This document shows positions 1,806 through 61,615 of a DNA stretch of 64,000 bases, piece by piece. Where the stretch lies: assembly GCA_002269645.1 (NCBI GenBank), contig NIVC01000704.1:17692-81691 (forward strand). The letters are read 5' to 3'. Each line of letters opens with the position of its first letter. The first letter of the stretch is position 1. This DNA comes from Macrostomum lignano (lineage: Eukaryota). A model generated the notes under the pieces. That model saw nothing but the letters and a program-made list of their open reading frames with translations, was not told the DNA's origin and ran no database searches. The position numbers and the translations under genes are program-made.

Positions 1806-2981
1806 TCCTTCCAGTCAAGCCTTATTGTCATCTTTGTTGACTTCCTCAAGGCCTTCGACTCGGTGGCGCGCGGCGCGCTGCCTCACGTGCTCCGTGCCTA
1901 CAACGTACTGCAGCAGCTGATCTCCGCCATCATGGCGCTGTATCAGGACACCACCGCCGCGGTAGCGACGCCAGACGGACCGTCGGACCTGTTTAGCACG
2001 ACCTCCGGAGTGCTACAGGGTGACACTCTGGCGCCCTTTCTCTTCGTGCTGGTGATGGACTGGGTGCTCAGGACCGGCCTGCCGACATCAGAGGACGGCT
2101 TTCTGCTGCAAAGGCGCACCAGTAGACGGCACCCGAGAAGAAACTGTCTGTCCTTGGCTACGCGGACGACCTCGCCCTGCTGTCTTCCACGGCCGAAGGC
2201 GCCCAATGGCTGCTGGACAGCCTGACTGAGGCGGCGGCGAGGGTCGGTCTCGTCATCAACGCCAGGAAGACCGAGGTGCTGACGGTGCCGCATGATCTAC
2301 CTGCCGAGATTCGACTTCGAGACGGCGACGGCCCGGACGGCGCTCCCGAAGTGCCTTCAGTTCGTCTACCTCGGCGGACTGGTGCCGGACGTCGGTGACG
2401 ACCTAGCGAGACGGCGCGGCAAGGCCTGGGCTGCCTTCCGATCTGTGCGGGCGGTGCTGCTCTCCGAGGCCCTGTCGACGGCGCCAGGTCCCAGCTGTTC
2501 CAGGCGGTTGTTGAGACCGCCCTGCTGTACAATGCTGAGACCTGGATGCTGACCGGGGCGCTTGAGGCGCAGCTCGACGCGGCGCATGCGGCCCTAGTCC
2601 GCGCCGCTTTCGGCGCCCGCCGCGGCCCTGGCAGCGAGACAACCGAGTCCCTGTACAAACGCACAGGCCTGACGCGGCCTTCTGCCCTGCTGAGTCAGCG
2701 GCGCCTGCGGCTTGCCGGACATGTCATCCGGGCCGAAGCCTACTGCCGAGAGCCGCTGCAGGACGTCCTGCTGTGGACCCCGCAGGGACCGCGCAGGCGT
2801 GGTCAGGGACGATCAGCCCGCTACGTCGACCGCCTTTTTGAAGATGCGCGAGCACCCAGCCAGACGGCCGGTGTGAAGCACATTAGAGACCTGGCTCTGA
2901 AACGCGCGATTTGACGCTCCCCCTCTTGGCCACTCCCGTGGCTGCGTGGGGCGTAACTATTATTATTATTATTATTATTAT
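1806..2981 (+). mobile_element. 5'-truncated, frameshifted RTE-like non-LTR retrotransposon (RT remnant)
   Basis: RT motifs DFLKAFDSV, GVLQGDTLAPFLF and YADDLAL (after a 1-nt frameshift near 2135), plus RLRLAGHV. (TAT)n tail; 13-bp TSD TATTACAAATTCT at 1793-1805 and 2982-2994. Confidence 0.9.
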
Positions 2982-4362
2982 TATTACAAATTCTAATTCT
3001 AAAAATTTTGCAATAAAATATATTTTCAAATATAATATTAATAAATTCTTTCTATACAAAATGTTCTGTAGCAAATTTTCAAAAGCTATAATAAAGTTCC
3101 CAATTCTGCAATCAAATGATTACAACCTTAGTCTTAGACTCTATTGTCAATCAATATATAAGCAGTGTTGGGCACTGTTAATGAAAATCATAACCTCTGT
3201 TAATGGCAAAAGTGTTAACATTGAAACACAAAAACTTTAACTTATAAACACTTAATTTTTTATGAGGAAGGGCACTTATAATACGTACAAATGTTTTAAA
3301 TTTACTCATTTTGCCTATTATAGGCCTATTTTGAAGAAAACCATTTTTCAAATTTGCGCTAAAATACTAACCTTTGTTTAAATGTTGTGATTTGCAAAAA
3401 TATTCTCACAATTAGTATTTGTTTTAAACTGCAATAAATATTGATATAAATAGAGGCCCTGAGTGGGCCAAATGAAGCAACTTGTTTTGAGCTTCCAATT
3501 GCAAGCAAAGTTTAATAAGTCCTTACTAAATCTTAAAAAGCAGTTGTTCAAATTGACTTTTTCATTTTCTAAAGTATTAAGCCCCTTATTGGGAGAATTA
3601 GAGAAATGTTAAGGAGCGAGAATTGCCTCAGGGCAATAACCCTATAGACTATATAACTGCCTCAGGGCAGGAAAAGCACCTCAGGGCAAGGAAAATGCAT
3701 AAGGCTATGACCCTCTGATCCAGGGAATGCCCAGGACTGAGAGAAAACTTATAGGAGTAAATAGAGTACTTGTAGACAGTGCCATTAGACCACTCAGACC
3801 AAAGAGTACAGTATATGTACAGATGCTACTAATAAGATAAGTAGACGCTACCAATATAGAAGTAGATAGAGGAATAGTCATACTACCAATAATTATAAGT
3901 ACATTTGTGCAAAAATACATTAATTAAATTAAGTATAGGAATTAGCCCTGCAATAGCTTTGGTGGCATTGTGAGATTATTTATAAAGACAGAAGTAACCC
4001 CTACATCAGTTAAGTTAATTATTAATAAGCAATAATCTGTTAAAGTTAACATATAAAAACAGAAATCTTGCACTTTTTTCCAAATCAGACTCCATAATGC
4101 AGTGTCTTCATCTTTTTAGCCAAATACTTGTAAGAGAAAATAGTGATAATAATACATTCAAAGGGCTGTTAATACTAACATTTTACTAATACAAACAATC
4201 ACTTCTATAAATATTCTATATTGTTGGCTATTGTCAACTCTGCTATATGCTAATGCTATGAACACTGCATTAAGTATACATACTACTACTATCTGATTGT
4301 AAGTGAAAGTTCTCAGATATTAAGTCATTTCACTTCAAACTATCATTATTATTATTAATTTA

Positions 4363-5735
4363 TTAGTATTCAATATAATCTCTATCAGAAGCAATAATAT
4401 TGTGCCAATGTGCATGCAGAGAATAGATACCCTAGAGCTGTCAAAATTAGAGATTTTATTTGAGATGAGATTCGAGACAAGAAAGGCTTATAAGTCGAGA
4501 ATTTTGAGACGAGACAAGACAAAGTAAATCTAAAAAATATATTTCAGAATTGCATCTTGTCTTGCTCTTATCTTGCCTTATCTTGTCTTAAATTTCTTGA
4601 TAAGATACAATTCTAAAATTTATTTTTTAGATTTTCCAGAATACTTTCTTAATTCTAGTTTAAATTCTTTGCTATTTATTTATAAGAATTTATGCTTGTA
4701 GCATATAGGCCCTTGGCCCTACTATGTCTATTACTAATTTGTCAAAAGACCTGTGTAGATTGTCTTCAAGTCTGCTATGATACACCTTGCTGCAGAACTG
4801 AAATGATAACTAAAAGAGCGCATATGCAATGCAAACTCGTATATAACGATGTTTGTTAAATAATTGCTCGACATTGGCTAGATTTTATTTTACCATTTGA
4901 AAATTACCCTATCAAGCGTGTTACAACAAACAGTTGTATTTATATGAAAATTTGCTCCCCTTTTTATATCTTATCACTTAAAAGCTTTTGAAAAAAGGTA
5001 TCAGAAAAATTCTTGAATCTTGTTGCGAATTTCTTGACAAAATTTGAGATTTCTCGAGACAAGAAAAAATGTTGAGATCTTGTTTCAAATCTTGTCTTGT
5101 CGAGATCTGTGACAGCTCTAGGATACTTGGAGCTTTGGGAGTCAAAGAAGTCATGCAGATGCTCCTCGACCTCTAAGTCCTCATCCTTGAAGCTGTGATC
5201 AGCCATAGACTGGCTGAGCATAGCAAAAAGGTGGTAGTTGGTAAGTGCAATATCTGGGCTATAAGGTGGATGGAAAAGAACCTCCCAACCAAAGGCTAGC
5301 AGCAGAGAGAATGGGTAACTTCTATGCGGCTATCCAGGTCATAGGCTACCAGCTTGTGCAGCACCCAACACCCAAGTTTAGCTTTCATCTATATCTGGCA
5401 GAGATGATTGACAATAGCCATCTAGTGCATATTCAGCTCATCAGCCAACTCACCTGTTGTCTGCTGATTGTTCTCCACAAGGAGGGCTTCTAGGGTATCA
5501 TTATTGAGTTCAGGTAGATGCCCATTGCAAGGTCTGTTTCAAGGCCCAGTTCTCCATTCTTGAAGCACTTGTACTTGTACCTATTGTACCCCAAAGAGGT
5601 CTTGATGGTAGACGAGCCGAATGCAATGTTGATGTCAGCAATGAAATTTGCCACTTTCTTGCCACAAAGGAAATCATTCAGCAACAGCATCAAGAGCCGA
5701 AGCTGATGTTTTGTCAAAGGGTTAGATTGCACCAT
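4363..5735 (-). pseudogene. Highly degenerate, internally deleted mariner transposase, interrupted by a MITE
   Basis: Minus-strand remnants: WVLHKL (WVPHEL motif), HPPYSPDIALTNYHLF (YSPDLAP motif), and GIYSLHAHW...DRDYIE beyond the MITE. Multiple stops; TIRs not recognisable. Confidence 0.7.
4433..5120. mobile_element. hAT-like MITE
   Basis: Terminal inverted repeats TAGAGCTGTCA...TGACAGCTCTA; internal GACAA/TTGTC subrepeats; TSD degenerate (AGATACCC vs GGATACTT). Confidence 0.6.
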
Positions 5736-5937
5736 ATTAGTGCTGCGCAGCTGAAGCAAGGTTCAATCCATACAGTGTAGTTGCAGGGTACAATTGTTCA
5801 CCCTATTTTTACCCATGAAAAAGTTCTAGAACATTCCAGATAAAAAGTTATACTCAAATGTTAAAAAAATTCTGAAAACTTTCCCTAAAATCAGATCTAC
5901 TAGTATTGATACGATACTTTGTTGGTAAATGGTAATA

Positions 5938-6361: not shown

Positions 6362-7634
6362 TACTGTATATCCAACAATAAACATACCCCCTGCCTCTTA
6401 AATTCAGCTGATTCTTATAAAGTAAGTCAATGCTGATCATTGGCATTTAATGATTACTTTAGCTCCGAGAAGTAGACAGTAGACTTGAACTAGGCTAGTA
6501 TAGTAAGCTTGCAATAAGAATGCGAATATAAATTTCGCAGAAAATGATTATTTTAAAATGATGTTTTGAAAAAAGCAACCTACTCATTACAACAAATCTT
6601 ATACTCAGGCTAATGTCTTATAATTAGATTACCGCTTATAATTTCTAAAATTGACAGTATTTCACATGTTTATTATAAGTTAAATTTTAATTTGCTTAGA
6701 AAATCTAACTATCTGCCGAATGCAATTTGCAGCAAAAACAGTCTGGACTGCAGTAATTCGTAACGGTTACTTCTAGTGGTCCTTGTTCGTAAGATTTGCG
6801 AGTGTAACGCGGTTCTGGATGTAATTAATTCTGCTTTCTTATATAGTAATTGATGGTCCGCGACCAGTCCTAAAAGAACTACATATGTACAATGATAGGG
6901 TCAAAGTATGCTGCTGGTAACATTTACTACACATGTACGGATCTAACCATCGAAAATTAAACTATCTATTGCATAATAGGTACTGATGCGACAGCGTTCC
7001 GGCCAACAGGATTTGTAAGGTTATTTTCCACAATCTCTAATTCCCTTCCCCGCGATTACTCATCCACATCCCGCCTACACTTCCGCGTTGTTGCGAAAGC
7101 ACTGAAGCTCGTTGAACGCGCATACAAAAGCTTTTATTCCCGAAAGCTAGCTATTTCCTTCTCGATCACGCGAGTTTCCATTTTTTCATCCCTAATGGAA
7201 CTAAGACAATTGTAAGTCGTCGGCTCCAATGCTACGCTCGTAGATAATGGATTCATGATTTAGAGGATTGTAAAATTGTAAGTTGAAGTTTACTGGCTTT
7301 ACTGGCTTTAGAGAAAACGACTCCATCTTTAAAAATGAGCGGCTGATGATAAAATGATGTTAATATACTGCAGATCTAGCTAAATGTTCATGCAGCACTT
7401 TCGAAAACTGCCCGCGATGTATTCATACGAATTACCAGGAACTTGGATGTGAAATCTATGTAGTTGCAAGCATTCGATCGTAATAAAAAACCATACAGAA
7501 TTATTTCGTACGAAATCCACTGATTATATATACTCTTACTTGGATCCCCGGGCCCTGGCAATACGCTCCTACGGTTAGGTGAGCACCTTATGGCCAACAG
7601 CTTTGATCAGTTATTTTAACGCAAATGCCCAAAT

Positions 7635-7657
7635 GCCGTAAAGACGGTCTCTGACTG
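7635..7657 (+). other. Flatworm spliced-leader 5' stem-loop-like motif (partial SL exon)
   Basis: CCGT-AAAG-ACGG hairpin. Matches the first ~23 nt of the Macrostomum SL as I recall it (GCCGTAAAGACGGTCTCTTACTG..., 1 mismatch) and resembles planarian SL GCCGTTAGACGGTC. Lacks the SL 3' ATG/GT donor, so not an SL RNA gene. Confidence 0.65.
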
Positions 7658-8953
7658 TTTTTACCCTGGTTGCCTTCTGGCAGCTTGTCTAAGGGTTGTG
7701 CGCAATCCGATTGGCTATGCCAATTTCTAAGGGTCCGCCCCGGAGGGGCTGTGCCTGTTCTAAAAATAAACCCTATCTTTCTTAGGTGTACATTCCAATT
7801 ATTTGGCCCTCGGCCTTGGTTTAGGGGGGGTGGTGCCCGGAGTGAGTTGGTTCTCTGGACTGCAGTGTGGCTAGGACGGGACTGAGCCCCCCGGTCGTAC
7901 CCGCCCTGCAGGAAAGAAAATGACCAATTCACAAAGGTGTACGGTAGACCCAGTAGCATGCCAGCCCTGAGGCTGAGCACCCGGGCTGCAGGTCGGCAAG
8001 CTGCCTGCTCTAGGGCTATGGTGCTCCTCCCTTCTGCCAATCTTTTTTTCTGGGCTGGCATCCCAGCGCTGTTTTATCCCTAGCTTTGTGCCTTTGTGGC
8101 TTTTTATTCTTTTAATCTTTTATCTGGCCAATAGAAGCCTTCCAATTCTCGGAGTTATGAGCTCTGCCCTTGCCCGGTCCATCTTGCCCTGTCCTCGGGT
8201 CCATCTCCTGGCTCCTGCTGAAGGTCCCTGCTTGCGTGTCTCTGGCTCTCATCCTGACAGTGGATTGGTGTCCTGGGAAGGATGTTCGTCCCGTACCGGG
8301 GACAACCGGCTGAGTCCGGAGTCCTCTTGCCCTGGGTGCCTCTTCTCCCGACCCCTTGGCCTGGCCCCCAATAATGAGCTGGATAGGCGATGCCCTTGGG
8401 TTGGTAGCAATAGAGGTGTTGCCATGTCCGCCTAGAGTCTCCCCCTCGGATACAAGCCTTCCAGACTCACTCCAATATAGAGCTGGGTAGTGAAAAGCCT
8501 TGAGGCTCGAGACCTACAGGCCAAGCTGTATAGGATCGCTCTTGGTAAATAGCTGCCCAGACTCGCTCCAATAGTTTAAGCCATTTCCGCAGGTTTAGGA
8601 GTAACTCCTCACTCGGACCGCTTTTTTCAAGTAGTATTTCAAGCATTTCGCTCTCCAATTTTTCTGCGCACTCCCAAGGACTCGCTGGCTGGGGGGTGGC
8701 CTGGGTGGACTCGGTCCTAGCACCGTCCCTGATTCCACTGTTTGGGTTGGCGGTGTCTTGTACCGTAGGCTTGGGTCAACTCGCCCTTTCCCTAGCTTTA
8801 AGCTGGGCCCAATCCCAATGTATTCATGGGGTATCTCGGGCCCTGGACAGCTAATGCCTTGGCCCCTGGAAGTGCCCCTCGCGGCAGAGCCCACCCCAGG
8901 GCTGATCCGCGGGTCCCCCTAGGACCCTTTCGTTTAACAAAAACAACAACAAC
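7635..8953 (+). mobile_element. Candidate non-autonomous retroposon with spliced-leader-like 5' end and (AAC)n tail
   Basis: GC-rich segment absent from the right arm. Begins GCCGTAAAGACGGTCTCTGACTG, ends with hairpin GGGTC-CCCCTAG-GACCC then TTTCGTTTAACAAAAACAACAACAAC. Flanked by CAAAT/AAAT at both junctions; no convincing sense ORF. Confidence 0.6.
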
Positions 8954-10625
8954 AAATCTACGAGACATCCAGGGCTTTCACGTGGTAAATCTATGAACAA
9001 TCCATGGTATTCCCGTGAAATTAAGAGCTCAAATTAATCTTGTAACAGTAGTCAACAGTTAGTACCGTGTGCAAAAAAAAAGTAAATATGCCTAAACCAA
9101 TTACAATATAAAACATACATTTTGAAAGAAGCAGCATATTTTTAAAATTAAGGATGCGTCATAATTGAAAAAAGTTGTTTATGTTTAAGTTAACGCTTTA
9201 TTTAAATATGCTTAATCAATTCATTTTTTAGGCGCATGCATGCATCCAGGTATTTGCGCTATCGATCATGCGCATTGCGCAGCTAGTGAGCTACATTAGC
9301 CTTCGCAGCTATAAGCTAAATGAGTCATGGTAGTAGGATTAACATTGACCGACTGAGATACAAATAAATAGTTGCAACCTAATAATAAGGTGTATTTACC
9401 GAACTTTGTTGTAGATCTTTTTTTAAAAACATTTATCAATTATCACTTATCAGGACTACTGAGTCTGTGTCTGAGTGTAGTTATGTTATTGTTCATGTTA
9501 GTTTTGTTTTTGGTCTGCTAATAATACTAAAATAGGATAGGGCTAAGCGCCTATGCCATTAAAAAATATGTTTTAATTTTTTAAATATTTTCTAAGCCTA
9601 GGCTACTAGGCCCATGCTGCCCATATCTTATTATTTTTGTAATTTTTGTCTAACCTTTGAATTTGTCTTTGACATACTTTTCAGGGGTTAAAATTTGCAT
9701 TGTTGGATAAGTTCCTTGAAAAAAACTTATCTTTATCATGTTACTGTAAGTTGTAACTTAACTTTTTAGTTCTTACCTAAGTTAGGGACCTAGGCCCTAC
9801 CACTTTAAAAAATAATATTTAGCTTGTGTTATTGTTAACATTTCTATTACTGCTAACTTTTTACTCACAAATTCTAATGTTCTTAATGTGATAGGACTAT
9901 TTCTTATTCTTATTCTATATTTTTTTTAAAGCTACCATCAAAGTTGTTACAATGCTCCTTGTTTTCTTTATTCATTATTAAAATCCTAATAATGACACTA
10001 AATTAAAATTGTAACTGTGATTTAAGTCTAGGCCCTACCTTTTGCAATGATCCTACTATTATTTTTAGGCAGTTGTTATTATTACGGTAACCATATAAAT
10101 AGTGAAATGGTTATTTTTACAGTTAACATTTAAAACAAATCTAAAAATCCTAAATCTATATACTAATTTTGCACTGTATTTGTGCGTGCATGCGTGTAAT
10201 TGATTTTTTCAAGAATGGCTCAACCAATTCTCTTCAAACTTGCATTATTCAATCAGAAAATTTCCTGGGACAGTTCGTGCATCTTGGCTAAGAAATTGCT
10301 CAATATTAAAGGGATTAAATATTGAAAACATGATTTTTTGCAAAGTTCAAGCAGTTCTTTTGACCTGAAATGCATTGTAAGAATGCTAGAAAAAACCTGA
10401 CTGACTGAATTTCAATTCTAATAAGATTGCATCACAACAAGTTGAAAACAGTGCCGAAGAAATGCACACACAACTTGATTTAAATTGTGTAACCATATTG
10501 CTAACTTAAATTGAGACTGATACTAGCTGACTAAGAAATTGATTATGTCATAACTTTTTGCTCTAACTGACTTGCTGAAAGATTGAATTATAAGGGCCAC
10601 AATTCATGTTCTCCAATCGACAAGA

Positions 10626-24982: not shown

Positions 24983-26611
24983 CAAGGGGCACTAGATAAG
25001 TTTTTAGCTGCAGTCAACATGTAACAGTTATAAAGATGAAACTTTTAGAGCTTTTCAAAGTACTCTCCATCAGCTTGGATGCACCGCCTCATCTGCTCAA
25101 ACCAAGTTTCAAAGCAGTGGCGCCACTCTGAGTGGGATACCCCCTCAATGGCCGATCTATAGGCATCAACAGCCTCTTCGGCGGAGGAAAATCGGCACCC
25201 TCGCATGGAATTCTTGATGAATGGAAACAATTGATGACCATTGATGAATGGTCAGGTGAATATGGTGGATGACCATACATGCGCAACAGTCGGCCGAGTC
25301 GGCCGATCTGGCCGACCGATTTGGCAGCCAACCAAGGAAGTCGCAAAAATGCCAACCCGAAAAAAACACCGAGTAGTAGTACTAAGTAGCTGACGAGGCA
25401 TTTTGGCTTTATAAGACAGTCATAGTTACTCCTGCCGTTTACCCAAAGTTGCGTTAATTTTGCTTTTGGGTTTTTTTACATGTGCATTTTTGGCCCAAAC
25501 CTACGATGTTGCATTTTTGGCCAAAAACTACGTCGCATTTTTGTTAAAACTAAGTCGCATGGCCGACCGAAATTTGGAGGTTGCGCATGTATGTGGATGA
25601 CTGAGCTGTTGGAAGCCCACCGTCTGTAGAAACTCTCGAGTTCAATTTGCCAGTGTGCGCACTGGCGTTGTCCTGGTGCAGCCAGAGACCTCGAATGCCG
25701 CACTTTGGCCGCGCCTCTTTAAGGCTGCTGATGACACGCAGCAGGCAGATGGTGCAGTACCAATCTGCAGTCACTGTGCACTGGCTCTCGAGTGCTACAG
25801 TCGCAATGTGGCCAGTCTTTTGGAAGAAAGTTGCCACCATTTGCTTGCCAGTGCTCCGACCCCTGACAACCTTGGCGTTCTTCATCTTCAAAAGCCCACA
25901 CACGCAACTGGCATTTTTGCTCGGGTTCGTAGCAATACACCCACGTTTTGTCACATGTGACAATGTCTGTGACAGACTTCGACGTCCCTCCACCAAACCT
26001 GTCCAGCATTTCCTGGCACCAGCTCATGCGGGCCTGCTTCTGCTCAGCAGTGAGCAAATGCGGCACCCAGTGACTGGTCAGCTTGCAGACTGCAAGGTGA
26101 TCACAAAGGATAGAAGCGACTGTCAGTGATGAGATACCAAGACATGCCTTAATTGTTTGATATGTCACTTGCCGATCAGCCTCAATCATGTGCTGCACGT
26201 GGTCGATAGTTTCAGGTGTCATCACTGAAACAGGTCGGCCAGTTTGACCTTTGTCTTCCAAGCTGTCTCGGCCACGCTTGAACTTTTGGAACCAGGCGGT
26301 GACAGTGGCGATGGATGGCGCAAGGTTAGGAAAGGCAGCAGACAGCCACTTGTGGCACTGGTGAAATGTCAAGCTGCTCTTAAAATCATAGAAAATCATG
26401 GCACAAAAGTGTTCACGATTGAGCTCCATTACAGTGCTGAAAGAGTCACAGACCTTGTTGAGATAAAATGCAACAGTGAGAGAATGGTGACAATTAGGTG
26501 CATGAAACTTTGGGGATCATGATAAAACTTCTTATTCAATATGCTCAGAAAATATGGCCTCATTTGAATAAACAGTTTGACCACAGCTAAAAACTTATCT
26601 AGTGCCCCTCG
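24983..26611 (-). mobile_element. Full-length but inactivated mariner transposon
   Basis: TIRs C(A/G)AGGGGCACTAGATAAGTTTTTAGC; TA TSD; transposase from ATG 26429 with WVPHLL, CDKTW, HQDNASAH, HPPYSPD and C-terminal DGEYFEKL; frameshifts plus a MITE insertion. Confidence 0.95.
25274..25593. mobile_element. hAT-type MITE (CATACATGCGCAAC TIR) inserted in the mariner
   Basis: Perfect 14-bp TIR; 8-bp TSD TGGATGAC; removing it restores QLSHPPYSPD. Confidence 0.92.
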
Positions 26612-29504: not shown

Positions 29505-29739
29505 GTTTATAGATCTATTTTTACTAAAAAATTGGTTCTATTTAAAACAAAGAAAATATATACTTTGGAAAATATGCAAAGCAAAACAAATTAGCTTTCT
29601 AAAAAATCCATGCAGATTTAATTTGCAAAAAAGTTCTTATTTCATGCAAGAAGGCCTTAAACAATACTAACTGAGAAACTGTGTATATCATAACTGCTTT
29701 TTGTGACATTTACCTTTAACTACCCCTGTTTTCATGCCA

Positions 29740-32273
29740 ATGGGCGCCTTCCTAGACAAACCTGTTGTAAACAAAGTGTCCGGCAGCGGCCAGCTGCCCG
29801 ACGGCATCGCCTACGGCCACTCCACCATGCAGGGCTGGCGCACCAGCCAGGAGGACGCGCACGCCTGCGCTCCCGGCTTCGACGCCAGCCAGCCAGACCG
29901 GCACCTGTTCGCCGTCTTTGATGGCCACGGCGGCGCCGAGGTGGCACTCTACCTGGCCAAGCACCTCCCCCAGTACCTGCTGCAGACTGACACCTACCAG
30001 AGCGGCGACTTTGAACAAGCGCTCAAGGACGCCTTTCTTGGCCTCGATGCCAAGCTGCTCGAGCCCGAGGTGGCCGCCGTGCTGAAGAGCCTCGCCAAAT
30101 CGGCCGAAGACGACTCCGAGTCCGACCAGGACGCCATGGCCGAGGAGGCCAGCGCCCTGCGCGAGGAGGCTGACATGCCGCTGGACCGCCTGCTGCGCAC
30201 CATCAACGCGGCCGCAGCGGCCAGGCGTCAGCGTAGGGCAGAGGAAGGTGAGATTTTTCGGATCCAATCTCTTACCATCATTCACTGACCATTTCTGACC
30301 AATTCTAAATATCACCCTCTCTGACCAATTCTGACCATCATCCTCTGACCAATTCTGACCATCATCCTCTGACCAATTCTGACCATCACCCTCTGACCAA
30401 TTCTGACCATCATCCTCTGACCAATTCTGACCATCACCCTCTGACCAATTCTGACCATCACCCTCTGACCAATTCTGACCATCATCCTCTGACCAATTCT
30501 GACCATCACCCTCTGACCAATTCTGACCATCATCCTCTGACCAATTCTGACCATCATCCTCTGACCAATTCTGACCATCATCCTCTGACCAATTCTGACC
30601 ATCATCCTCTGACCAATTCTGACCATCATCCTCTGACCAATTCTGACCATCATCCTCTGACCAATTCTGACCATCATCCTCTGACCAATTCTGACCATCA
30701 CCCTCTCTGAGCAATTCTGACCATCATCCTCTGACCAATTCTGACCATCACCCTCTGACCAATTCTGACCATCATCCTCTGACCAATTCTGACCATCATC
30801 CTCTGACCAATTCTGACCATCATCCTCTGACCAATTCTGACCATCATCCTCTGACCAATTCTGACCATCATCCTCTGACCAATTCTGACCATCATCCTCT
30901 GACCAATTCTGACCATCATCCTCTGACCAATTCTGACCATCATCCTCTGACCAATTCTGACCATCATCCTCTGACCAATTCTGACCATCATCCTCTGACC
31001 AATTCTGACCATCATCCTCTGACCAATTCTGACCATCATCCTCTGACCAATTCTGACCATCATCCTCTGACCAATTCTGACCATCATCCTCTGACCAATT
31101 CTGACCATCACCCTCTCTGAGCAATTCTTCAGTTATTGCCTACAAACTTATTTAATCTTCTCAATCGCCAGTGAGTCAGCTGAAGCCGCTGTCGCTGAAA
31201 ACGAGAACAACGAGAATACGGAGCGGGAGGCGGCCGCCCACACCGCCGACTCTGCCGATAACGGCGTCAATGGTTCTGCCGCCGCCGCCACCGCTGCTGC
31301 TGCCACCAACGACGAGGGCGCCGGCAGTTCGTCGAATGCGGAGGCGAAGGCAGCGGCGGAGGAAGACGCCGAGGCAGAGGAAGACGACAAAGACTACGTG
31401 CCCGGCGAAGCGGATGAGGAAGAGGAGGAGGAAGAAGAGGAAGACGAGGAAAGCAAAGATGAGGGCGATGAAGATGAGGAGGATGGCGAGGAAGGTGAGG
31501 AAGGCGACGATGATGAAGAGGAGGACTCCGAATCCGAGGAATCGGACGAGTCAGAAGAGTACGAGGTCATCATGCCCACCGGTGACGACCCCGGCGTGGA
31601 CTCCGGGACCACCGCCGTGGTGGCCCTGATGGTTGGCGACCGGCTGTTCGTGGCCAACGCTGGCGACTCGCGCGCTGTCCTGTCCGATGCCGGCGTCGCG
31701 GTCGACATGAGCGACGATCACAAGCCGGAGGATGAGCCAGAGCGGCAGCGCATCGAGACTGCTGGCGGTCACGTGACTAAGGAGGGCCGCGTGAACGGCG
31801 GCCTGAACTTGAGCCGAGCCATCGGAGACCACGCCTACAAGCAGAACTCCGAGCTGACGGCCGCCAAGCAGATCATCAGCCCGCTGCCCGACGTTCGCTC
31901 GGTCACCATCACAGACAGTCACCGGTTTCTTCTGTTGGCCTGCGACGGCATCTGGAACTCGATGTCCTCCCAGGAGGCCGTGGACTTCTGCGAGAAGCGC
32001 CTGTCCGCCGGGCTTGGCCCCGAGCAGGTGTGCGAGGCCCTGTTCGACCACTGCCTGGCCCCCAACACCGAGGACTCGGACGGGACCGGCTGCGACAACA
32101 TGACGGCCGTGCTGGTCCGCTTCCACGGCGCCGACCAGCAGCAGGCGGCGGAAGGCGTCTCCCGCAAGCGCCAGCTGCCATCAGCCGGCCAGGAGGCCGA
32201 GGCCGCCGCCGGCGCTGAAGCTTCCGCCGCGGCCGCTGGGGAGAGTGAGAGCAAGAGAGCCAAGGAGGGCTAG
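29740..32273 (+). CDS. PPM1G: Protein phosphatase 1G (PP2C-gamma), left copy; exons 29740-30247 and 31180-32273
   Basis: [25 protein letters not shown], long acidic insert, [39 protein letters not shown] donor at 30248; in-frame acceptor is the CAG at 31177-31179. An upstream in-frame ATG exists at 29734. Confidence 0.92.
30285..31122. repeat. 24-bp intronic tandem array (CTGACCAATTCTGACCATCATCCT)
   Basis: ~34 units in two blocks; right-arm counterpart 48880-49112 has only ~8-9. Confidence 0.95.
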
Positions 32274-37536: not shown

Positions 37537-38283
37537 NNNNNNNNNNNNNNNNNNNNNNNNNNNNNNNNNNNNNNNNNNNNNNNNNNNNNNNNNNNNNNNN
37601 NNNNNNNNNNNNNNNNNNNNNNNNNNNNNNNNNNNNNNNNNNNNNNNNNNNNNNNNNNNNNNNNNNNNNNNNNNNNNNNNNNNNNNNNNNNNNNNNNNNN
37701 NNNNNNNNNNNNNNNNNNNNNNNNNNNNNNNNNNNNNNNNNNNNNNNNNNNNNNNNNNNNNNNNNNNNNNNNNNNNNNNNNNNNNNNNNNNNNNNNNNNN
37801 NNNNNNNNNNNNNNNNNNNNNNNNNNNNNNNNNNNNNNNNNNNNNNNNNNNNNNNNNNNNNNNNNNNNNNNNNNNNNNNNNNNNNNNNNNNNNNNNNNNN
37901 NNNNNNNNNNNNNNNNNNNNNNNNNNNNNNNNNNNNNNNNNNNNNNNNNNNNNNNNNNNNNNNNNNNNNNNNNNNNNNNNNNNNNNNNNNNNNNNNNNNN
38001 NNNNNNNNNNNNNNNNNNNNNNNNNNNNNNNNNNNNNNNNNNNNNNNNNNNNNNNNNNNNNNNNNNNNNNNNNNNNNNNNNNNNNNNNNNNNNNNNNNNN
38101 NNNNNNNNNNNNNNNNNNNNNNNNNNNNNNNNNNNNNNNNNNNNNNNNNNNNNNNNNNNNNNNNNNNNNNNNNNNNNNNNNNNNNNNNNNNNNNNNNNNN
38201 NNNNNNNNNNNNNNNNNNNNNNNNNNNNNNNNNNNNNNNNNNNNNNNNNNNNNNNNNNNNNNNNNNNNNNNNNNNNNNNNNNN
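37537..38283. other. Assembly gap (747 N)
   Basis: Run of N. Confidence 1.
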
Positions 38284-54708: not shown

Positions 54709-55996
54709 TCTATTGATAAATTATCAGGAAAGATCTACAAAAGATCTACAACAAAGTTCGGTAAATACACCTTATTATTTGGTTGTAACTATTTATTGGT
54801 ATCTCAGTCGGTCAACGTTAATCCTACTACCATGACTCATTTAGCTTATAGCTGCGAAGGCTAATGTAGCAGGTAGCTCACTAGCTGCGCATGATCGATA
54901 GCGCTACTGGATGCATGCGCCTAAAAAATGAATTGATTAAGCATATTTAAATAAAGCGTTAACTTAAACATAAACAACTTTTTTTAATTATGACGCATCC
55001 TTAATGTAAAAAATATGCTGCTTCTTTTAAAATGTATGTTTTTTATTGTAATTAGGTCTAGGCATATTTACTTTTATTTTTTTGCACACGGTACTGACTG
55101 TTGACTACTGTTACAAGATTAATTTGAGCTCACGGGAATACCATGGATTGTTCATAGATTAACCACGTGAAAACCCTGGATGATTCGTAGATTTACCGCG
55201 TGAAAACCATATTTCCTTTTTCGATCACGGTAGTATACCATTCATGTAAGTAGTTCTATAACTTCTCTTTATTTTTAATAACTGTGTAATATCTAAGTCT
55301 AAGTCTAAGATATTTCTTTTGTTAGTAGAACAGTGTATTCATTTTTTCAAATAATAACTAGGCCTTATATAATAACATTATTAAAAATTAAAATAGCAAG
55401 GTCCTTACTTAGCTGCAGGGCGGTCCGAAGAAAACAGCAAGGTCCAATGTCAGTAAGAAAGGTAGGCCTTTTAGCTTAGAAAAAGCTTTAGCTTTTAGCT
55501 TGCTTTTAAATGTGCTATGTTAGGCATAATAAAAAAATGAAAATGTATCTCTAAATAATACTTCTAGTGGGGCAAATTTTATATTATTCTTTTATCTTTT
55601 ATTAAGCCTAAAAATTCATAATCTACACCCCTATAGGCTACAGCAATACCAATGGGCATAGGTTAGGCCCCTATTAACATTTAAGTATTTTTGCGAAGGT
55701 GTCCTTTTATATTGATTTATTTGAAGCCTGATCTCTCATATTATATTTTATTGAGTAATTATTTTTTGGTTGATACTAAGGACAGGTTAAGTATTTTTAA
55801 TAAGCTATATTACATATATATTACATACCTATAAAAATAGGGCCTAGTAGCCAATTTGATAATAGCCATTTTATTTAGTTTCTAATTAGAAGAGGCAATT
55901 ATTCTATATATTATTTCTATTATTAGGAATCATAAAATAGTCTATATAGACTAGCAATGACTATCTATTAGTCTTAGACCCTGTGCCAGCATCTGT

Positions 55997-56031
<35 letters not shown>

Positions 56032-58095
56032 TAGTCTTAGAAATCTAACCCTAGTTTAATCTAATTCCCAATGGGTTATTCAGTGGACTTGAAAGGCATG
56101 GCCATTAGCATTATTGCACTGAGTGCAAACTAAATAGTTTCTATACATGGGCAGCAGGAGCTTGTAGCACCAGGGGCATGTGCCCCCCAGAATATGAGTC
56201 CATGCAATATATTTTAGTGCTTTTTCTATTTTTGGCCCTTATTAGCAGTTACAAAGGTACCTATGCCCCCCTTGCCCTGTGCCTGGTCCCCCCTCAAAAA
56301 TATTAGGCTCTGCTGCCCCTGCTGCTGTAGGATATTATATGCCTGAATACAGATTTCTTATTCCTATTTATTAGACCTTTAATTGTAAGCAGTCTAGATT
56401 CTTCTCATACCTTGGTGGCCCTGATATATTAGCTATAAGCTCTAGTATTATAGATCTATCAAGCAGAAAAAATTGGCTCAATAGTTTATTTATCTTATAG
56501 CTTATATGCTTCTTCATTCAGCCCCCTAAGAACTAGGTTGTTTTTGTCTACCATGATATCAGTTGACATGCAGTGTTGCTTCTACATTTGTTTCCTTATT
56601 GGAAGCTACTTTGATATTGCCTAGGCTACTTGTTGCTATACAATTTGGTATGTTCTTGCCAACTCAAGAGTTTCTACTAGGCTAATATTAAAGATATTTA
56701 GGAGCCTCTTGCATGAGGAGTTGTTGCAGCAAGTAAGTGGCCATTGTTTGACTAGCACAGGCCTTGTATCTGGTAGGCTTCAAAGGCACTCCATAGCATG
56801 CTGTGTTAGATGTCAATAATGGCACTAGTAGAACTAGTAATAAATAGATCACATTGTCTTAATATTAAGCTGAACTGCTCTATTAAGCTGAACAACTGTG
56901 GCCATAGCCTTGCCTTCTATTGATAGCCTTGCTATAGTGCCAACTGCATTATTGAAGTCATTTATGCTTGTAATTCTTTGCTCTTTGCTAGCAATATAAA
57001 AGAGTACTCTGTTTTATGTTTAATTTGTAATGCTTATAGCTAGCAAATAATGCAGAAGGATTGTTGACCACTCTGGCCAACAGTTGCTAACTAAGTGAGG
57101 GTCATCTCTAATGTTAAAAGTTCCTGGGGAAGGCAGTTAAAGATAGGCCATTGTACATTTTTATATAATTCCAATGTAATATTGAAAAGGGGAGACTTAC
57201 AATTGACTGCTACAATTTGATTGCCAAAATTTAATCTTTAAATAATTTGACTGCTAGCAATTTCACCATTGCTATATTTCATCTTGTGTAAGTAGAGCAG
57301 CAGTCAAATTGTCTAGCAATGAAATAGTTAGGCAATAAAACTGTTGGTAGTCAAATTATGGCAGTCAATTGTCATAGATCCATTGAGTAGTTTGCCATGC
57401 AATGTCTAAACTTATGTGGCAATAAGCTTGGCCCTCTGGCCAGGGCAATTGGCTTTTATATATATTTTGGTACCAGTGTGCAGCATGCATTAGCCCTATA
57501 GCTTGAGATATTACATATTCAGCTAGATTGCACATGAAATGATTGCATTGAATATTGGAAACAATATTGCCAAAGGCCTGGTGCAATGCATAATAGTTTC
57601 ATTTTTTGGTATTAATAAAAATTGGACTTTTAATTTTGAACTTGGACTTGGCCCAAGGTTGTTTCAAGATTCTTGCTCTGTTGCATAGCCTTGGCAACTA
57701 TATGCTCATTATATACTTTGTTAGAATCAATAGTTACAATAGCTAAATTGACTTAGAGGAGCTCTATATTAGTGTGATTGGGGAACGGTGGAGCATGTAA
57801 GGGAAAATCCTAGACTTTTTTTTTCTCCAAATTTTCAAAGCATATAGCTTATATATTATATAGCTATTTGTATAGCATAGTATCAGAAACATGCAATAGC
57901 CAGCCAACCCAGAAAATCTGGCCATTGTAAAATGTAGAAAGTAAGGTTAAGTTAGAAAATTGATAACTTTTTTGTCAATATTAAACAAATTTTGACAAAG
58001 TCTTGACCAATTTAATAAAAGTTGATTTAACAAAAGTTGCATTTCTATGAAATCTTATTGACTATCCATATTATCTTATTTCAACAATCTATCAG

Positions 58096-58640
58096 GTGTT
58101 GCCACAGCTTGAGATATTTGGAACTTGCACTGCTACAGCTTCAAACAATGTCATTCAGGCAGCAGCACCACCCACTAAGGTTTCAACTATGGCCCAGCCC
58201 AATACAGTACCACAACAGGGCCTCTTTCCAAACCTGGATGTATTTAAGAATTGTCAGCTTCAGTCGCAAGACAAACTGCAGCATGTACAGCCAAGCCAGC
58301 AGTTTGTGCAGCCAAATTTGTGGTTAGACCAGTCACCACCTCAACAACAAGGCCCACCACAGTGTGCTCAGAATGACCAGCAGCCCTCTGGCCCAGTCGA
58401 ACCGGCTTTTGTGTTTGGTGAAAATATTCCACTCTTCAGCAGCGATTTCTTCCTAATCGAAGCGGTACCGTTTGAACAGGAACTCAGCACAATCCTGCAG
58501 ATGTCTCGTGAGTTGGTTCTTTTAATAAAATTTTCCCATAACAACTGCGTCTATAACGCGTATTTTAAATTTAAAGCTGGCCTATGAATATATTTTCAGC
58601 TGCTGTACCAACGCTGCCGGTGTTTACTGATGAAGGATGA
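58096..58640 (+). CDS. Possible Gln/Pro-rich 3' exons (58096-58507, 58600-58640) of an unidentified gene
   Basis: Open frame bounded by TATCAG| acceptor and |GTGAGT donor; next TTTTCAG| exon continues in phase to TGA; no homology recognised. Confidence 0.4.
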
Positions 58641-61591
58641 AACGAATTTGCGGAAGGCTTCTACACAGAGTACCCGTTGAATTAGATGAGCTAAACAGAC
58701 TAACTGAATATGCTTATACGAGCGGATTTATCTATTTATTTATCCAGCATCTGCGTTTTATCTTATGTCAACTCTTTTCTTAAGTGCCTACTGGCCACAC
58801 AGTTTAAATTCTTCTTGAACTCGATGAAAGCTAGGTGTTTGTGAGATTATAGCCTGATTGGAGGCCTGTGATTTTTGTATGCCCTGTTTATTACTAACTC
58901 CTATAATTTCTTCAGCTGTAAGTTTTTTTGCTTATCCGATAACAAAATGCCTGAAAGTTTCATGTTTTTCTATGGGGCCATCGTTTGTTCTTTTCTCTTA
59001 GTCCTAATCCTTGACTAATCCTTGGTTATGATTTAATTCGCTAACTTATGTGCACGCGCTTGTGCCGACCAATCTGCGGCCGGCAAAAGCAGTTGGGCTC
59101 TAATCTCAAACCCTATAGGTTTGGAATGTGGCTTGCTTGTGTCAAACATGTGTTGGGGGTGAGCGATGGAGAACAAGCGTGCCTTTTGATCCTATTTCGA
59201 CGACTCAGTCAACAACGAGAAAACGCATTGTAATATAAACCTCTCTGCCCGGTCTGCCTCGCTTCACCGTGATTTGTAGTCACCGGCCTCTGACGGAAAC
59301 AGCTTGAGTTTATCCGGCCGTTTTATTTGCGTGGGAACACTGTCTTTGAGAACATTAAAGCTGTGAGACTTTTTTTTTGTTTTATGAATTATATTAGCTC
59401 GTAGTTACTTTATGTATGGCTACTTCAATTTTTTATGCCTTCACAGATTTTTTTAATAATAGGGCATTTGCGTTAAAATAAATGATCAAAGCTGTTGGCC
59501 ATGAGGTGCTCACCTAACCGTAGGAGCGTATTGCCAGGGCCCGGGGATCCAAGTAAGAGTATAATCAGTGGATTTCGTACGAAACAATTCTGTATGGTTT
59601 TTTATTACGAATGCTTGCAACTACATAGATTTCACATCCAAGTTCCTATAGTAATTCGTATGAATACATCGCGGGCAGTTTTCGAAAGTGCTGCATGAAC
59701 ATTTAGCTAGATCTGCAGTATATGGTATATTAACATGATTTTATCATCAGCCGCTCATTTTTAAGGATGGAGTCGTTTTCTCTAAAGCCAGTAAAGCCAG
59801 TAAACTTCAACTTACAATTTTACAATCCTCTAAATCATGAATCCATTATCTACGAGCGTAGCATTGGAGCCGACGACTTACAATTGTCTTAGTTCCATTA
59901 GGGATGAAAAAAATGGAAACTCGCGTGATCGAGAAGGAAATAGCTAGCTTTCGGGAATAAAAGCTTTTGTATGCGCGTTCAACGAGCTTCAGTGCTTTCG
60001 CAACAACGCGGAAGTGTAAGCGGGATGTGGATGAGTAATCGCGGGGAAGGGAATTAGAGACTTGTGGAAAATAACCTTACAAATCCTGTTGGCCGGAACG
60101 CTGTCGCATCACTACCTGTTATGCAATAGATAGTTTAATTTTCGATGGTTAGATCCGTACATGTGTAGTAAATGTACCAGCAGCATATACTTTGAACCTA
60201 TCATGTACATATGTAGTTCTTTTAGGACTGGCCGCGGACCATCAATTACTATATAAGAAAGCAGAATTAATTACATCCAGAACCGCGTTACACTCGCAAA
60301 TCTTACGAACAAGGACCACTAGAAGTGACCGTTACGAATTACTGCAGTCCAGACTGTTTTTGCTGCAAATTGCATTCAGCAGATACTTAGATTTTCTAAG
60401 CAAATTAAAATTTAATTTATGATAAACATGTGAGATACTGTCAATTTTAGAAATTATAAGCGGTAATCTAATTATAAGACATTAGCCTGAGTATAAGATT
60501 TGTTGTAATGAGTAGGTTGCTTTTTTCAAAACATAATTTGTAAAGAAAGTGGTTTGGTTTGGGTCTCGTTTGAATTTTTCCTAAATGCTGGGCTCGCGTG
60601 TGTACTGCTGTAGTAGGATATAGAGAGTTAGAAAAGTAGGTGTGGTCGCCAATTATTTTTTCTTTCCAAATACTAAAGCTGACGCGATGTTTGTGTGTTG
60701 CAAGTGAACTCCTACAATTCTGCCAAGTCAGCGTTGAATTCTGCCAAGTCAGCGTTGAAACTTATATGGGAAAACTGCAAATTTTCCGGAGCAGGCTTTA
60801 GGCTATTTTAATTTTTAATTTTCACATTTTAACATCCCTAAAAAAGCAGAAAACTGCTTTTTTAACCCCCAATAACCTTCTTTGGCCACTCTGCCTGGGG
60901 CTGCAGCCAGTTTGTAAAAATAGCCACCCCAACCTCCGCCCGCGGGCCGCTGTGTATTGAGGGGTGGTGGGTGCGAGTGGAAATAAAACCCCCCGCGTGT
61001 TGGGGGGGGTTGAGTTAAATTTAATGCTTCCCCCAGAACGGGGGGTTGGGCTTGGGTTGAGTGTACATAGCAGTTGTACAGTGTAAACAGATAGATAGGA
61101 ATCAGGACTATGTCGAGATTCAATTGGTTTTATTATTGGCGCCTTTTTTTCTCCATAGGCATCCCTGTGTATTAGCTTGGCAGTGAAATTCAATGAATTG
61201 CGAGCTTCTCTAGCAAGCAGTCGGGAAATCGGTAAATTTCAAACGCTAACTGTTCCTCGAGTTTTAAACTTTGAGAGGAGAAACTTATATTGCTGGAAAG
61301 ATCTTGCAACGCAGAGTTCGAGGATATAAGTTGTTTGCTTTATATATGAAAACTAAAAGCTTTTCATTGGGAAAACTATTCCCATACTTTTAACTTTTTG
61401 CAAAAATTGTTATCAGTCTTGCGAGACGTAATAGATAAAGTTGGGGGAGGGTTCAACTTCTCACTGCTGCTGTGTATTGGAGGGTTGATTTAGATTGACT
61501 GACTGACTGTGAAATAAGTTGCGCAATGAATTGATTCAATTAGCTCAATATTTTTATCAGTGCCTTTTAACACGAAGCTGTGCGCGTAGTT

Positions 61592-61615
61592 CTAACCCTA
61601 ACCCTAACCCTAACC
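61592..61615. repeat. Interstitial (CCCTAA)4 telomere-like repeat; others at 16236-16257, 20486-20525, 27278-27312
   Basis: Read directly. Confidence 0.9.

What the first reader, a model, noticed from the sequence alone, without database searches (positions are those of the whole stretch)
7635..8953. Candidate spliced-leader-headed, (AAC)n-tailed non-autonomous retroposon
Seen: a 1319-bp GC-rich, left-arm-only segment. Its first base coincides with the breakpoint in arm homology and starts GCCGTAAAGACGGTCTCTGACTG. It ends in a hairpin plus an AAC tail, with (C)AAAT at both junctions. Known: flatworm SL exons begin with a (G/A)CCGT..ACGGT hairpin, the match to the Macrostomum SL is from memory, and NeSL/Utopia LINEs target SL/U2 genes. 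Inference: a SINE-like element that carries or acquires the SL RNA 5' end (snRNA-promoter capture, cap mimicry or template switch) and is mobilised by a LINE. It is not a retrocopy of a trans-spliced mRNA, because the SL stops after ~23 nt without the terminal ATG.
Basis: partly seen in the sequence, partly recalled or inferred. Interest (0 to 1): 0.85.

Follow-up and report, generated by a model that had tools for sequence, protein, structure and literature searches.

The report
Spliced-leader-headed chimeric retrocopy in Macrostomum
A 1.3-kb non-coding insert in one copy of a duplicated flatworm (Macrostomum lignano) region begins with the first 23 bases of the spliced-leader RNA and ends in an AAC repeat; it is most likely a one-off chimeric retrocopy made when a reverse transcriptase jumped onto the SL RNA, a known kind of event seen here with a new partner RNA.

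Summary
The sequence facts hold. Bases 7635-7657 equal nt 1-23 of the Macrostomum SL RNA (22/23), checked against two papers and against two intact SL RNA genes I recovered from environmental contigs. The segment is GC-rich (55% vs 35% in the flanks), has no ORF, and has no Pfam, Rfam or protein relative. It ends in (AAC)n and is absent from the other palindrome arm. The window is M. lignano Mlig_3_7 (NIVC01000598.1).

Two points need correcting. The right arm is not an empty site: it holds 4,267 bp of other DNA, and a split 35-bp repeat unit shows the left arm lost ancestral sequence. The 4-5-nt (C)AAAT is therefore not a secure target-site duplication. Also, only SL nt 1-23 are present; the rest of the 109-nt SL RNA is not.

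My best reading is a chimeric retrocopy. A LINE reverse transcriptase copied a tail-bearing non-coding RNA, then switched template onto SL RNA and ran to its 5' end, as in U5/U3/U6-LINE chimeras. Insertion came with a target deletion.

It remains a minority rival at about 0.2. Interest is modest.

The parts
6552..7630 (.). Left-arm 5' flank, homologous to right arm 60544-59462 (96%). Homology ends at C7630.
7622..7637 (+). Exact tandem duplication CAAATGCC CAAATGCC across the 5' junction. Copy 1 plus C7630 are flank, AAAT is extra, and GCC equals SL nt 1-3.
7631..7634 (+). AAAT at the 5' junction, absent from the right arm at this point. It is either a 4-nt TSD or short templated filler.
7635..7657 (+). 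Copy of SL RNA nt 1-23 (22/23; G7653 in place of T). Alternatively, SL nt 1-18 plus a donor RNA that starts GACTG, with ACTG microhomology.
7638..7664 (+). 12-bp hairpin: GTAAAGACGGTC / TCT / GACTGTTTTTAC (10 Watson-Crick plus 2 G-U pairs). It joins the SL part to the first bases of the body.
7658..7683 (+). T5 run and pyrimidine-rich tract ending in CAG. Together with CTGAC at 7651-7655 it looks like a branch site plus 3' splice site. Noted only.
7658..8935 (+). GC-rich non-coding body. No ORF over 157 aa, no Pfam, Rfam or protein relative, and single copy in the window.
8911..8927 (+). Perfect 6-bp stem GGGTCC / CCCTA / GGACCC, 8 nt before the tail. Not statistically unusual.
8936..8953 (+). 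Tail AACAAAAACAACAACAAC. No poly(A) signal in the preceding 55 nt.
8954..9421 (.). Left-arm 3' flank, beginning AAATCTACGA, homologous to right arm 55194-54739 (91%).
55195..59461 (-). Right-arm counterpart: 4,267 bp of unrelated AT-rich single-copy DNA occupying the same position. Its end next to the 3' junction completes a 35-bp repeat unit, so it is at least partly ancestral.

Best explanation
The 1.32-kb segment is an RNA-derived insertion found only in the left arm. It is a chimeric retrocopy with two directly fused parts. The first is a DNA copy of the first 18-23 nt of the M. lignano SL RNA, beginning at its nucleotide 1. The second is an unrelated, non-coding, GC-rich RNA that ends in a short (AAC)n-type tail.

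Most likely mechanism:
1. A non-LTR (LINE) reverse transcriptase primed on the tail at a nick in ...GGTAAAT/CTACGA.
2. It copied the body RNA to its 5' end (GACUGUUUUUACC...).
3. It then switched template onto an SL RNA molecule at an internal position. The 4-nt ACUG homology with SL nt 20-23 would help this. A 12-bp pairing between the body RNA's 5' end and SL nt 4-15 may have helped too.
4. It ran on to the capped 5' end of the SL RNA.
5. The cDNA end was joined to an upstream DNA end, with loss of at least 14 nt and probably up to 4.3 kb of the original sequence.

Shown: SL identity from nt 1; absence of the rest of the SL RNA; absence from the other arm; the tail; lack of coding capacity or relatives; loss of ancestral target DNA.

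Inferred: the template switch, the LINE enzyme, the order of events, and that this is a single event and not a family.
For: - SL nt 1-23 match at 22/23 and start exactly at SL nt 1. A start at the transcript's first base points to an RNA intermediate.
- Nothing beyond nt 23 of the 109-nt SL RNA is present. Local alignment is no better than shuffles, and the covariance model scores 11.8 bits against 131-137 for real genes.
- The segment is missing from the paralogous right arm, and the flanks re-align on both sides.
- The 3' end is a simple-repeat tail with no poly(A) signal. This is the type from which stringent LINEs initiate.
- An RTE-like LINE with a GC hairpin plus a microsatellite tail lies 5 kb away, so such LINEs exist in this genome.
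- The body has no ORF, Pfam, Rfam or protein relative.
- Precedent (PMC4476161): snRNA/LINE chimeras arise by template switching. U5 and U3 parts are 3'-truncated because the switch is internal. L2- and RTE-type LINEs form such chimeras with TSDs of only 1-9 bp.
- The junction has ACTG microhomology and a 12-bp hairpin, -13.2 kcal/mol against -5.6 for the native SL.
Against: - This is one instance only.
- The donor RNA is unidentified.
- No LINE with the same 3' end or (AAC)n tail was found in the window.
- There is no secure TSD.
- The right arm is not an empty site, so insertion and deletion may have been separate events.
- The hairpin and microhomology arguments are post hoc (about 1e-3 to 1e-2 by chance).
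- Genome-wide copy number is unknown.
- The switch point lies in the 5' strand of SL RNA stem I, not in a single-stranded stretch, which is where human 3'-truncated snRNA pseudogenes end (truncations fall almost always in single-stranded segments).
Confidence: 0.5

Rival explanations
1. The segment is one member of a family of non-autonomous (SINE-like) retroposons whose constant 5' head is SL nt 1-23. For example, master copies could sit inside SL RNA genes and be co-transcribed from the SL promoter, then be mobilised by a LINE that recognises the 3' hairpin and (AAC)n tail.
For: - The exact SL 5' start and a LINE-like simple-repeat tail without a poly(A) signal.
- The head and the first body bases form a stable 12-bp hairpin that could be a conserved feature.
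- Site-specific LINEs in SL and snRNA genes are known elsewhere (own knowledge: SLACS/CZAR, NeSL-1, Utopia).
- Partial SL sequences next to LINE/LTR elements are frequent in parasitic flatworms (PMC12582326).
- Chimeras born by template switching can become families (MINE in Magnaporthe, PMC2104539).
Against: - Single copy in 64 kb.
- No called protein in a 5.8-billion-protein collection that includes the M. lignano NCBI and UniRef sets matches any of ten six-frame segments. This is a weak argument for a non-coding element.
- Only 23 of 109 SL RNA nucleotides are present, so there is no snRNA body or Sm site.
- The flanks are not an SL RNA gene.
- The one LINE in the window has a different 3' end and tail.
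- 1.3 kb is long for a SINE.
Confidence: 0.2
2. The segment is a retrocopy of a genuinely SL-trans-spliced (probably non-coding) transcript. SL nt 24-45, and perhaps some 5' exon sequence, were lost either by intramolecular skipping of the reverse transcriptase across RNA structure or by a later small deletion.
For: - About 30% of M. lignano genes are trans-spliced (PMC8629364), so SL-bearing RNAs are abundant.
- ACTG microhomology and a strong hairpin at the junction fit RT skipping.
- Calvelo et al. interpret partial-SL loci as integrated trans-spliced transcripts.
Against: - No remnant of SL nt 24-45.
- The tail is (AAC)n and not poly(A), and there is no poly(A) signal.
- No ORF or parent protein.
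- The sequence just after the head looks like a pyrimidine tract plus CAG acceptor, which would be removed by trans-splicing and not retained.
Confidence: 0.12
3. This is a DNA-level event or an artefact. One option is a templated or segmental copy from another locus where a broken SL RNA gene abuts this sequence. Another is a mis-join in the assembly: the window is a near-perfect palindrome around a 747-N gap.
For: - Replacement of 4.27 kb by 1.32 kb, and an 8-nt templated-looking duplication at the 5' junction, resemble end-joining repair.
- The palindromic scaffold with an N run at 37537-38283 raises assembly concerns.
Against: - A DNA copy would not be expected to begin at the first transcribed base of the SL RNA and end in a retroposon-type tail.
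- There is no N or discontinuity near 7.6-9.0 kb, and both flanks align to the other arm across the junctions.
Confidence: 0.08

Closest known systems
snRNA/LINE chimeric retropseudogenes made by template switching (U6/L1; 3'-truncated U5/L1 and U3/L1; U6-L2 and U6-RTE chimeras; 'Group IV' of Doucet et al. 2015, PMC4476161)
   Same: A small nuclear RNA copy that starts at its own 5' end is fused head-to-tail, in the same orientation and without an intervening poly(A), to another retro-copied RNA that carries the LINE-type tail. For U5 and U3 the snRNA part is 3'-truncated because the switch is internal. With simple-repeat-tailed LINEs the TSDs are only 1-9 bp.
   Different: - The small RNA here is the SL RNA. 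I found no published SL RNA case in the searches I ran.
- Only 18-23 nt are retained.
- The 3' partner is not identifiable as a LINE, SINE or mRNA.
- There is no secure TSD, and target DNA was lost.
Partial spliced-leader sequences adjacent to LINE/LTR elements in parasitic flatworms (Calvelo et al. 2025, PMC12582326; 597 discarded loci)
   Same: This is also a flatworm genome with a partial SL next to retroelement-like sequence and no other SL RNA gene feature.
   Different: - Those loci were attributed to integration of trans-spliced retrotransposon transcripts, and the paper does not say which part of the SL is kept.
- Here the 5' part is kept and the 3' part (with the ATG) is missing, which trans-splicing alone cannot give.
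- This is a free-living macrostomid.
SL-gene-specific non-LTR retrotransposons (SLACS/CZAR/CRE in trypanosomatids, NeSL-1 in C. elegans; own knowledge)
   Same: An SL 5' fragment lies directly upstream of a retroelement. Co-transcription from the SL promoter is a possible route to an SL-headed RNA.
   Different: - Those elements sit inside SL RNA genes, with the rest of the gene downstream, and they encode RT and an endonuclease.
- Here neither flank is an SL gene and there is no ORF.
MINE of Magnaporthe (WEIRD RNA + MGL LINE 3' part; PMC2104539)
   Same: A chimera of a cellular non-coding RNA and a LINE 3' end made by template jumps. It shows how such a chimera can seed a new repeat family.
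   Different: MINE is multi-copy and its LINE partner is known. Neither is shown here.
Relict SLs in dinoflagellate retrogenes (Slamovits & Keeling 2008, as cited in PMC12582326)
   Same: SL sequence is written into the genome through reverse transcription.
   Different: Those relicts lack the SL 5' part, because they are re-trans-spliced at an internal AG. Here it is the 3' part that is missing.

Membership tests
snRNA/LINE template-switch chimeric retrocopy | The 5' part is a small nuclear RNA copy beginning at the RNA's native first nucleotide, in the same orientation as the 3' part. | tested here: met
   7635-7657 equals SL RNA nt 1-23 (22/23) against published SLs and two intact SL RNA genes.
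snRNA/LINE template-switch chimeric retrocopy | The two parts are fused directly, with no poly(A) between them. | tested here: met
   The SL part runs straight into TTTTTACCC, with no A-run. ACTG microhomology is possible.
snRNA/LINE template-switch chimeric retrocopy | The 3' part is a 5'-truncated LINE/SINE or processed RNA that carries the tail used for target-primed reverse transcription. | tested here: inconclusive
   An (AAC)n-type tail is present. The body has no recognisable LINE, SINE or mRNA parent.
snRNA/LINE template-switch chimeric retrocopy | One pair of target-site duplications flanks the whole chimera. | tested here: inconclusive
   Only (C)AAAT, 4-5 nt. The other arm shows loss of ancestral DNA, and there is an 8-nt flank duplication at the 5' junction.
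SINE / non-autonomous retroposon family with a small-RNA head | Many dispersed copies share head, body and tail. | not testable with these tools
   Single copy in the window. No M. lignano genome collection was searchable. Metagenome scans found none.
SINE / non-autonomous retroposon family with a small-RNA head | The head contains the small RNA including its promoter or structural core. | tested here: not met
   Only nt 1-23 of 109 are present. The SL RNA covariance model scores 11.8 bits against 131-137 for real genes.
SINE / non-autonomous retroposon family with a small-RNA head | The 3' end is shared with a partner LINE. | tested here: inconclusive
   The only LINE in the window (1830-2990) has an unrelated 3' end and an (ATT)n tail. 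Other LINEs of the genome could not be examined.
Processed retrocopy of an SL-trans-spliced mRNA | The complete SL exon (45 nt, ending ATG) is joined to an exon. | tested here: not met
   SL nt 24-45 are absent.
Processed retrocopy of an SL-trans-spliced mRNA | A poly(A) tail preceded by a poly(A) signal, and a coding body related to a parent gene. | tested here: not met
   The tail is (AAC)n and none of 12 signal hexamers occurs at 8880-8945. No Pfam or protein relatives.
SL-gene-specific non-LTR retrotransposon (SLACS/CZAR/NeSL type) | Inserted in an SL RNA gene, with the remainder of the gene downstream and the promoter upstream. | tested here: not met
   The flanks show no significant SL RNA similarity. 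The upstream flank is shared with the SL-less right arm.
SL-gene-specific non-LTR retrotransposon (SLACS/CZAR/NeSL type) | Encodes a reverse transcriptase and an endonuclease. | tested here: not met
   No ORF over 157 aa and no Pfam hit.
Functional SL RNA gene | SL exon with terminal ATG, a GTAAG donor, an Sm-like site between two hairpins, about 109 nt in total. | tested here: not met
   True genes in L001 and L002 show all of these features. The element lacks them.

The most novel reading that the evidence does not exclude
Macrostomum harbours a previously undescribed family of SL-headed retroposons. These could be non-autonomous elements, or their LINE partner, that reside in or target SL RNA genes at about nt 23, are transcribed from the SL promoter, and carry the SL 5' hairpin (extended here to 12 bp) as a functional 5' module. 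That would be a flatworm counterpart of SLACS/NeSL, or the birth of an SL-RNA-derived SINE.
Probability: 0.15. Interest if true: 0.7.

Novelty: new member of a known kind. Interest (0 to 1): 0.35.

Why it matters
If the main reading is right, the locus shows three things. The abundant SL RNA of a flatworm can be picked up by a LINE reverse transcriptase through template switching. Such enzymes were active after the M. lignano duplication. Insertions can also be accompanied by kilobase deletions.

In practice, it warns that partial SL hits in flatworm genomes need not mark SL RNA genes or trans-spliced retrocopies. It also gives one sequence-resolved junction (microhomology plus hairpin) for thinking about how RNA-RNA proximity guides template jumps.

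Only if many copies share the same head would it become a new class of SL-derived retroposon.

Tried and rejected
- **Rfam:** gathering search on the whole window and E-value search on 7400-9200 gave nothing relevant.
- **Coding potential:** Pfam on the ten longest six-frame segments gave nothing. A concatenated six-frame query against 5.8 billion proteins gave no hit. The body is therefore not a recognisable coding or LINE ORF remnant on either strand.
- **Other copies in the window:** self-BLAST found none, and nothing resembles the 3' end.
- **Metagenome scan with the 3' hairpin/tail 28-mer:** 0 hits.
- **SL-head scans of metagenomes and prokaryote genomes:** these found two intact SL RNA genes, which served as references, but no second SL-headed element.
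- **Exact-protein look-ups of nearby window ORFs, to fetch paralogous M. lignano loci:** none on record.
- **LINE RT search, meant to sample M. lignano LINE 3' ends:** it returned mostly short environmental contigs, with best identity 81%, so I dropped it.
- **'Diverged SL RNA gene or SL-RNA-derived head' idea:** rejected by local alignment and by the covariance model.
- **'Inserted into an SL gene' idea:** rejected. Flank similarity to SL RNA is not significant (p = 0.03 upstream and 0.22 downstream).
- **Trans-splicing at a cryptic donor inside the SL:** rejected, because there is no GT at nt 23/24.
- **Y-branch (trans-splicing intermediate) read-through:** considered because of the CTGAC + pyrimidine tract + CAG after the head. 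Rejected because the topology would place SL intron sequence there, not SL exon sequence.
- **3' hairpin as a recognition signal:** not statistically distinguishable from chance.

Full report
**What the window is.** A PP2C exon in the window is 100% identical to BOX15_Mlig004716g2 of Macrostomum lignano. The gene maps to GCA_002269645.1 contig NIVC01000598.1, 862 kb. The 64 kb form a large imperfect inverted repeat. The inner arms are 98-100% identical and the outer arms 88-96%. A 747-N run at 37537-38283 lies beside the centre. The two "arms" can therefore be used as paralogous or allelic copies for comparison, whether the palindrome is real or a scaffolding product.

**Checking the observation.** The sequence is as quoted.
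- The first 23 bases, GCCGTAAAGACGGTCTCTGACTG (7635-7657), match the Macrostomum spliced leader at 22 of 23 positions.
- The M. lignano consensus is CCGTAAAGACGGTCTCTTACTGCGAAGACTCAATTTATTGCATG (PMC5173321).
- The longest assembled SL, from M. cliftonense, starts one base earlier with G (PMC10468722 supplement).
- To obtain a real SL RNA gene I scanned public contigs for the head. This recovered two intact genes, L001 615-723 and L002 1589-1695. Each has a 45-nt exon identical to the published SL, a GTAAG donor, a hairpin, a U-rich Sm-like stretch and a terminal hairpin. Each folds well (z = -3.3 and -3.9) and fits the description of the 109-nt M. lignano gene in PMC8629364.
- Against these genes the element matches nt 1-23 and nothing else. 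Local alignment of SL RNA nt 24-125 to the whole element is no better than shuffles. A covariance model of the two genes scores them at 131-137 bits and the element at 11.8 bits.
- The head occurs once in the window.
- The segment has 55% GC against 35% in the flanks.
- It ends in AACAAAAACAACAACAAC, with none of 12 poly(A)-signal hexamers found at 8880-8945.
- The 6-bp stem at 8911-8927 is real but not unusual.

**The arm comparison needs correcting.** Left 6552-7630 aligns to right 60544-59462 (96%), and left 8954-9421 aligns to right 55194-54739 (91%). Between those points the left arm has 1,323 bp and the right arm has 4,267 bp of unrelated, AT-rich DNA that is single copy in the window. 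The right-arm sequence next to the 3' junction, GGTTTTCACGCGGT, is the first 14 nt of a 35-bp unit. Its remainder (AAATCTACGA...) and its second copy are present in both arms. The left arm has therefore lost ancestral DNA: at least 14 nt, and plausibly the whole 4.27 kb. The site is a replacement, not a filled site against an empty one.

**The junctions.** (C)AAAT does occur at both junctions. The AAAT at 8954-8957 is original target sequence. The AAAT at 7631-7634 is the only extra sequence between the flank and the SL start. TRF also shows an exact tandem duplication, CAAATGCC CAAATGCC, at 7622-7637 spanning the 5' junction. So the AAAT may be a 4-nt TSD, or it may be a short templated copy of the flank of the kind left by end-joining. 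I cannot decide between these, and I do not count a TSD as shown.

**What the body is.**
- There is no ORF over 157 aa on either strand.
- There is no Pfam hit in the ten longest six-frame segments and no Rfam hit.
- A search of those segments against 5.8 billion proteins found no relative. That collection does contain the M. lignano NCBI and UniRef proteins.
- The body is single copy in the window and unrelated to the only LINE present. That LINE is a 5'-truncated RTE-like element at 1830-2990, ending in a GC hairpin and (ATT)9.
- The body is thus a non-coding RNA-like sequence whose 3' end resembles a simple-repeat-tailed retroposon more than an mRNA.

**The junction in detail.** The RNA fold of the first 34 nt gives a 12-bp hairpin: SL nt 4-15 (GTAAAGACGGTC), loop TCT, then GACTGTTTTTAC. 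It has 10 Watson-Crick and 2 G-U pairs and an energy of -13.2 kcal/mol, against -5.6 for the same length of native SL.
- Four of these pairs are intrinsic to the SL, because ACUG pairs with CGGU.
- The other eight need the mismatch base G7653 and the first seven body bases, TTTTTAC.
- By composition, the seven TTTTTAC pairs alone have a chance probability of about 1e-3 in that register (my hand estimate from base composition, not a tool result). With the first 18 nt of the head held fixed and the following 16 nt sampled, 0.7-2% of samples fold as well.
- This allows an alternative parse: SL nt 1-18, followed by a donor RNA beginning GACUGUUUUUACC. The cDNA end of that donor could re-anneal to SL nt 20-23 (ACUG). 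This parse would also explain the single "mismatch".
- After the head come CTGAC, a pyrimidine-rich tract and CAG (7651-7683), which look like a branch site and 3' splice site. I record this but could not connect it to a mechanism.

**Mechanism.** Three features point to reverse transcription primed at the tail and ending on an SL RNA template:
- the start at the first transcribed base of an abundant capped small nuclear RNA;
- the direct fusion to an unrelated RNA;
- the simple-repeat tail.

This is the architecture of snRNA/LINE chimeras. According to Doucet et al. (PMC4476161):
- they arise by template switching;
- U5 and U3 parts are 3'-truncated because the switch is internal;
- L2- and RTE-type LINEs make only this kind of snRNA copy;
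- their TSDs are 1-9 bp because insertion starts from a simple repeat.

The 5' end was then joined to an upstream DNA end with loss of target DNA, either in the same event or later. I put this reading at 0.5.

**Rivals.**
The snRNA-promoter idea is weakened because only 23 nt of SL RNA are present. The SL-gene-resident idea is weakened because neither flank resembles an SL gene.
- A trans-spliced transcript with RT skipping or a later deletion (0.12) fits the microhomology. It does not fit the tail, the missing poly(A) signal or the acceptor-like tract that is retained.
- A DNA-level copy or an assembly error (0.08) does not explain a start at SL nt 1.
- A chance match is excluded by 22/23 identity at the exact breakpoint.

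**Comparison with what is known.** The closest relatives are the snRNA/LINE chimeric retropseudogenes. In flatworms, the closest report is the 597 "partial leader next to LINE/LTR" loci that Calvelo et al. discarded while annotating SL RNA genes (PMC12582326). This locus differs in three ways: the small RNA is the SL RNA, only its first 18-23 nt are kept, and the partner RNA is unidentified. It is not a member of the SL-gene-specific LINEs, of SL RNA genes, or of ordinary trans-spliced retrocopies, because defining features of each were tested and not met.

**Verdict.** This is a real and correctly spotted feature, with an over-reaching family interpretation. It is best filed as a new member (SL RNA as acceptor) of the known class of template-switch chimeric retrocopies, pending a genome-wide copy count.

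Noticed in passing
window 6361-37536 vs 42400-63974; N run 37537-38283: The whole window is a giant imperfect inverted repeat around a 747-N gap. Inner arms are 98-100% identical and outer arms 88-96%. It contains two mirror copies of a PP2C gene (29734-32273 + and 47726-49665 -). It may be a true palindromic duplication or a head-to-head scaffolding of paralogous or haplotype contigs in Mlig_3_7.
   Followed up: partly
window 1830-2990 (+): A 5'-truncated, frameshifted RTE-like LINE (FVDFLKAFDSV ... YADDLALL ... LRLAGHVIR). It ends in a GC-rich hairpin, GTAAC and (ATT)9. The best database relatives are only 81% identical, and M. lignano UniRef entries are 57-80% identical.
   Followed up: partly
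window 7622-7637: An exact tandem duplication CAAATGCC/CAAATGCC straddles the 5' junction of the insert. It looks like a templated filler from end-joining and makes the exact 5' boundary ambiguous.
   Followed up: partly
window 7604-7630: The upstream flank GATCAGTTATTTTAACGCAAATGCCC weakly resembles SL RNA nt 70-91, GATCAGTATTTTTAGCAGCCC (local alignment p about 0.03 by shuffling). It is shared with the right arm and is probably chance.
   Followed up: partly
L002 1589-1695 (JAGQZA010000190.1, labelled Flavobacteriaceae MAG) and L001 615-723 (JGI Ga0302322_100095745): Both contigs carry an intact Macrostomum-type SL RNA gene whose 45-nt exon is identical to the published SL. This is macrostomid flatworm DNA in a metagenome and, apparently, a eukaryotic contaminant contig in a bacterial MAG.
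   Followed up: partly
window 55195-59461 (right arm): This is 4.27 kb of right-arm-only DNA. It has an (ATT)12 microsatellite at about 55998-56033 and a 163-aa ORF (58096-58587) that has no database relative and no exact record.
   Followed up: partly
window 25719-26429 (-) and 5490-5759 (-): A mariner-like transposase ORF (236 aa, HTH_48-type N-terminus) and a degenerate second mariner N-terminal fragment.
   Followed up: no
window 10.7-11.1k, 13.4-15.4k, 17.0-19k, 22.0-23.6k, 30.2-31.2k, 36.5-37.5k, 42.4-43.3k, 53.7-54.1k: Numerous minisatellite arrays with 17-40-nt units. Several are shared between arms or recur (for example the AGATAGCAAGCATCCCCC family at 13.4k, 21.8k and 53.7k).
   Followed up: no
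window 62001-63000: An extreme strand asymmetry (GC skew 0.84, AT skew 0.64): a purine-only stretch on the + strand inside a right-arm-specific 3.2-kb insertion (60545-63770).
   Followed up: no
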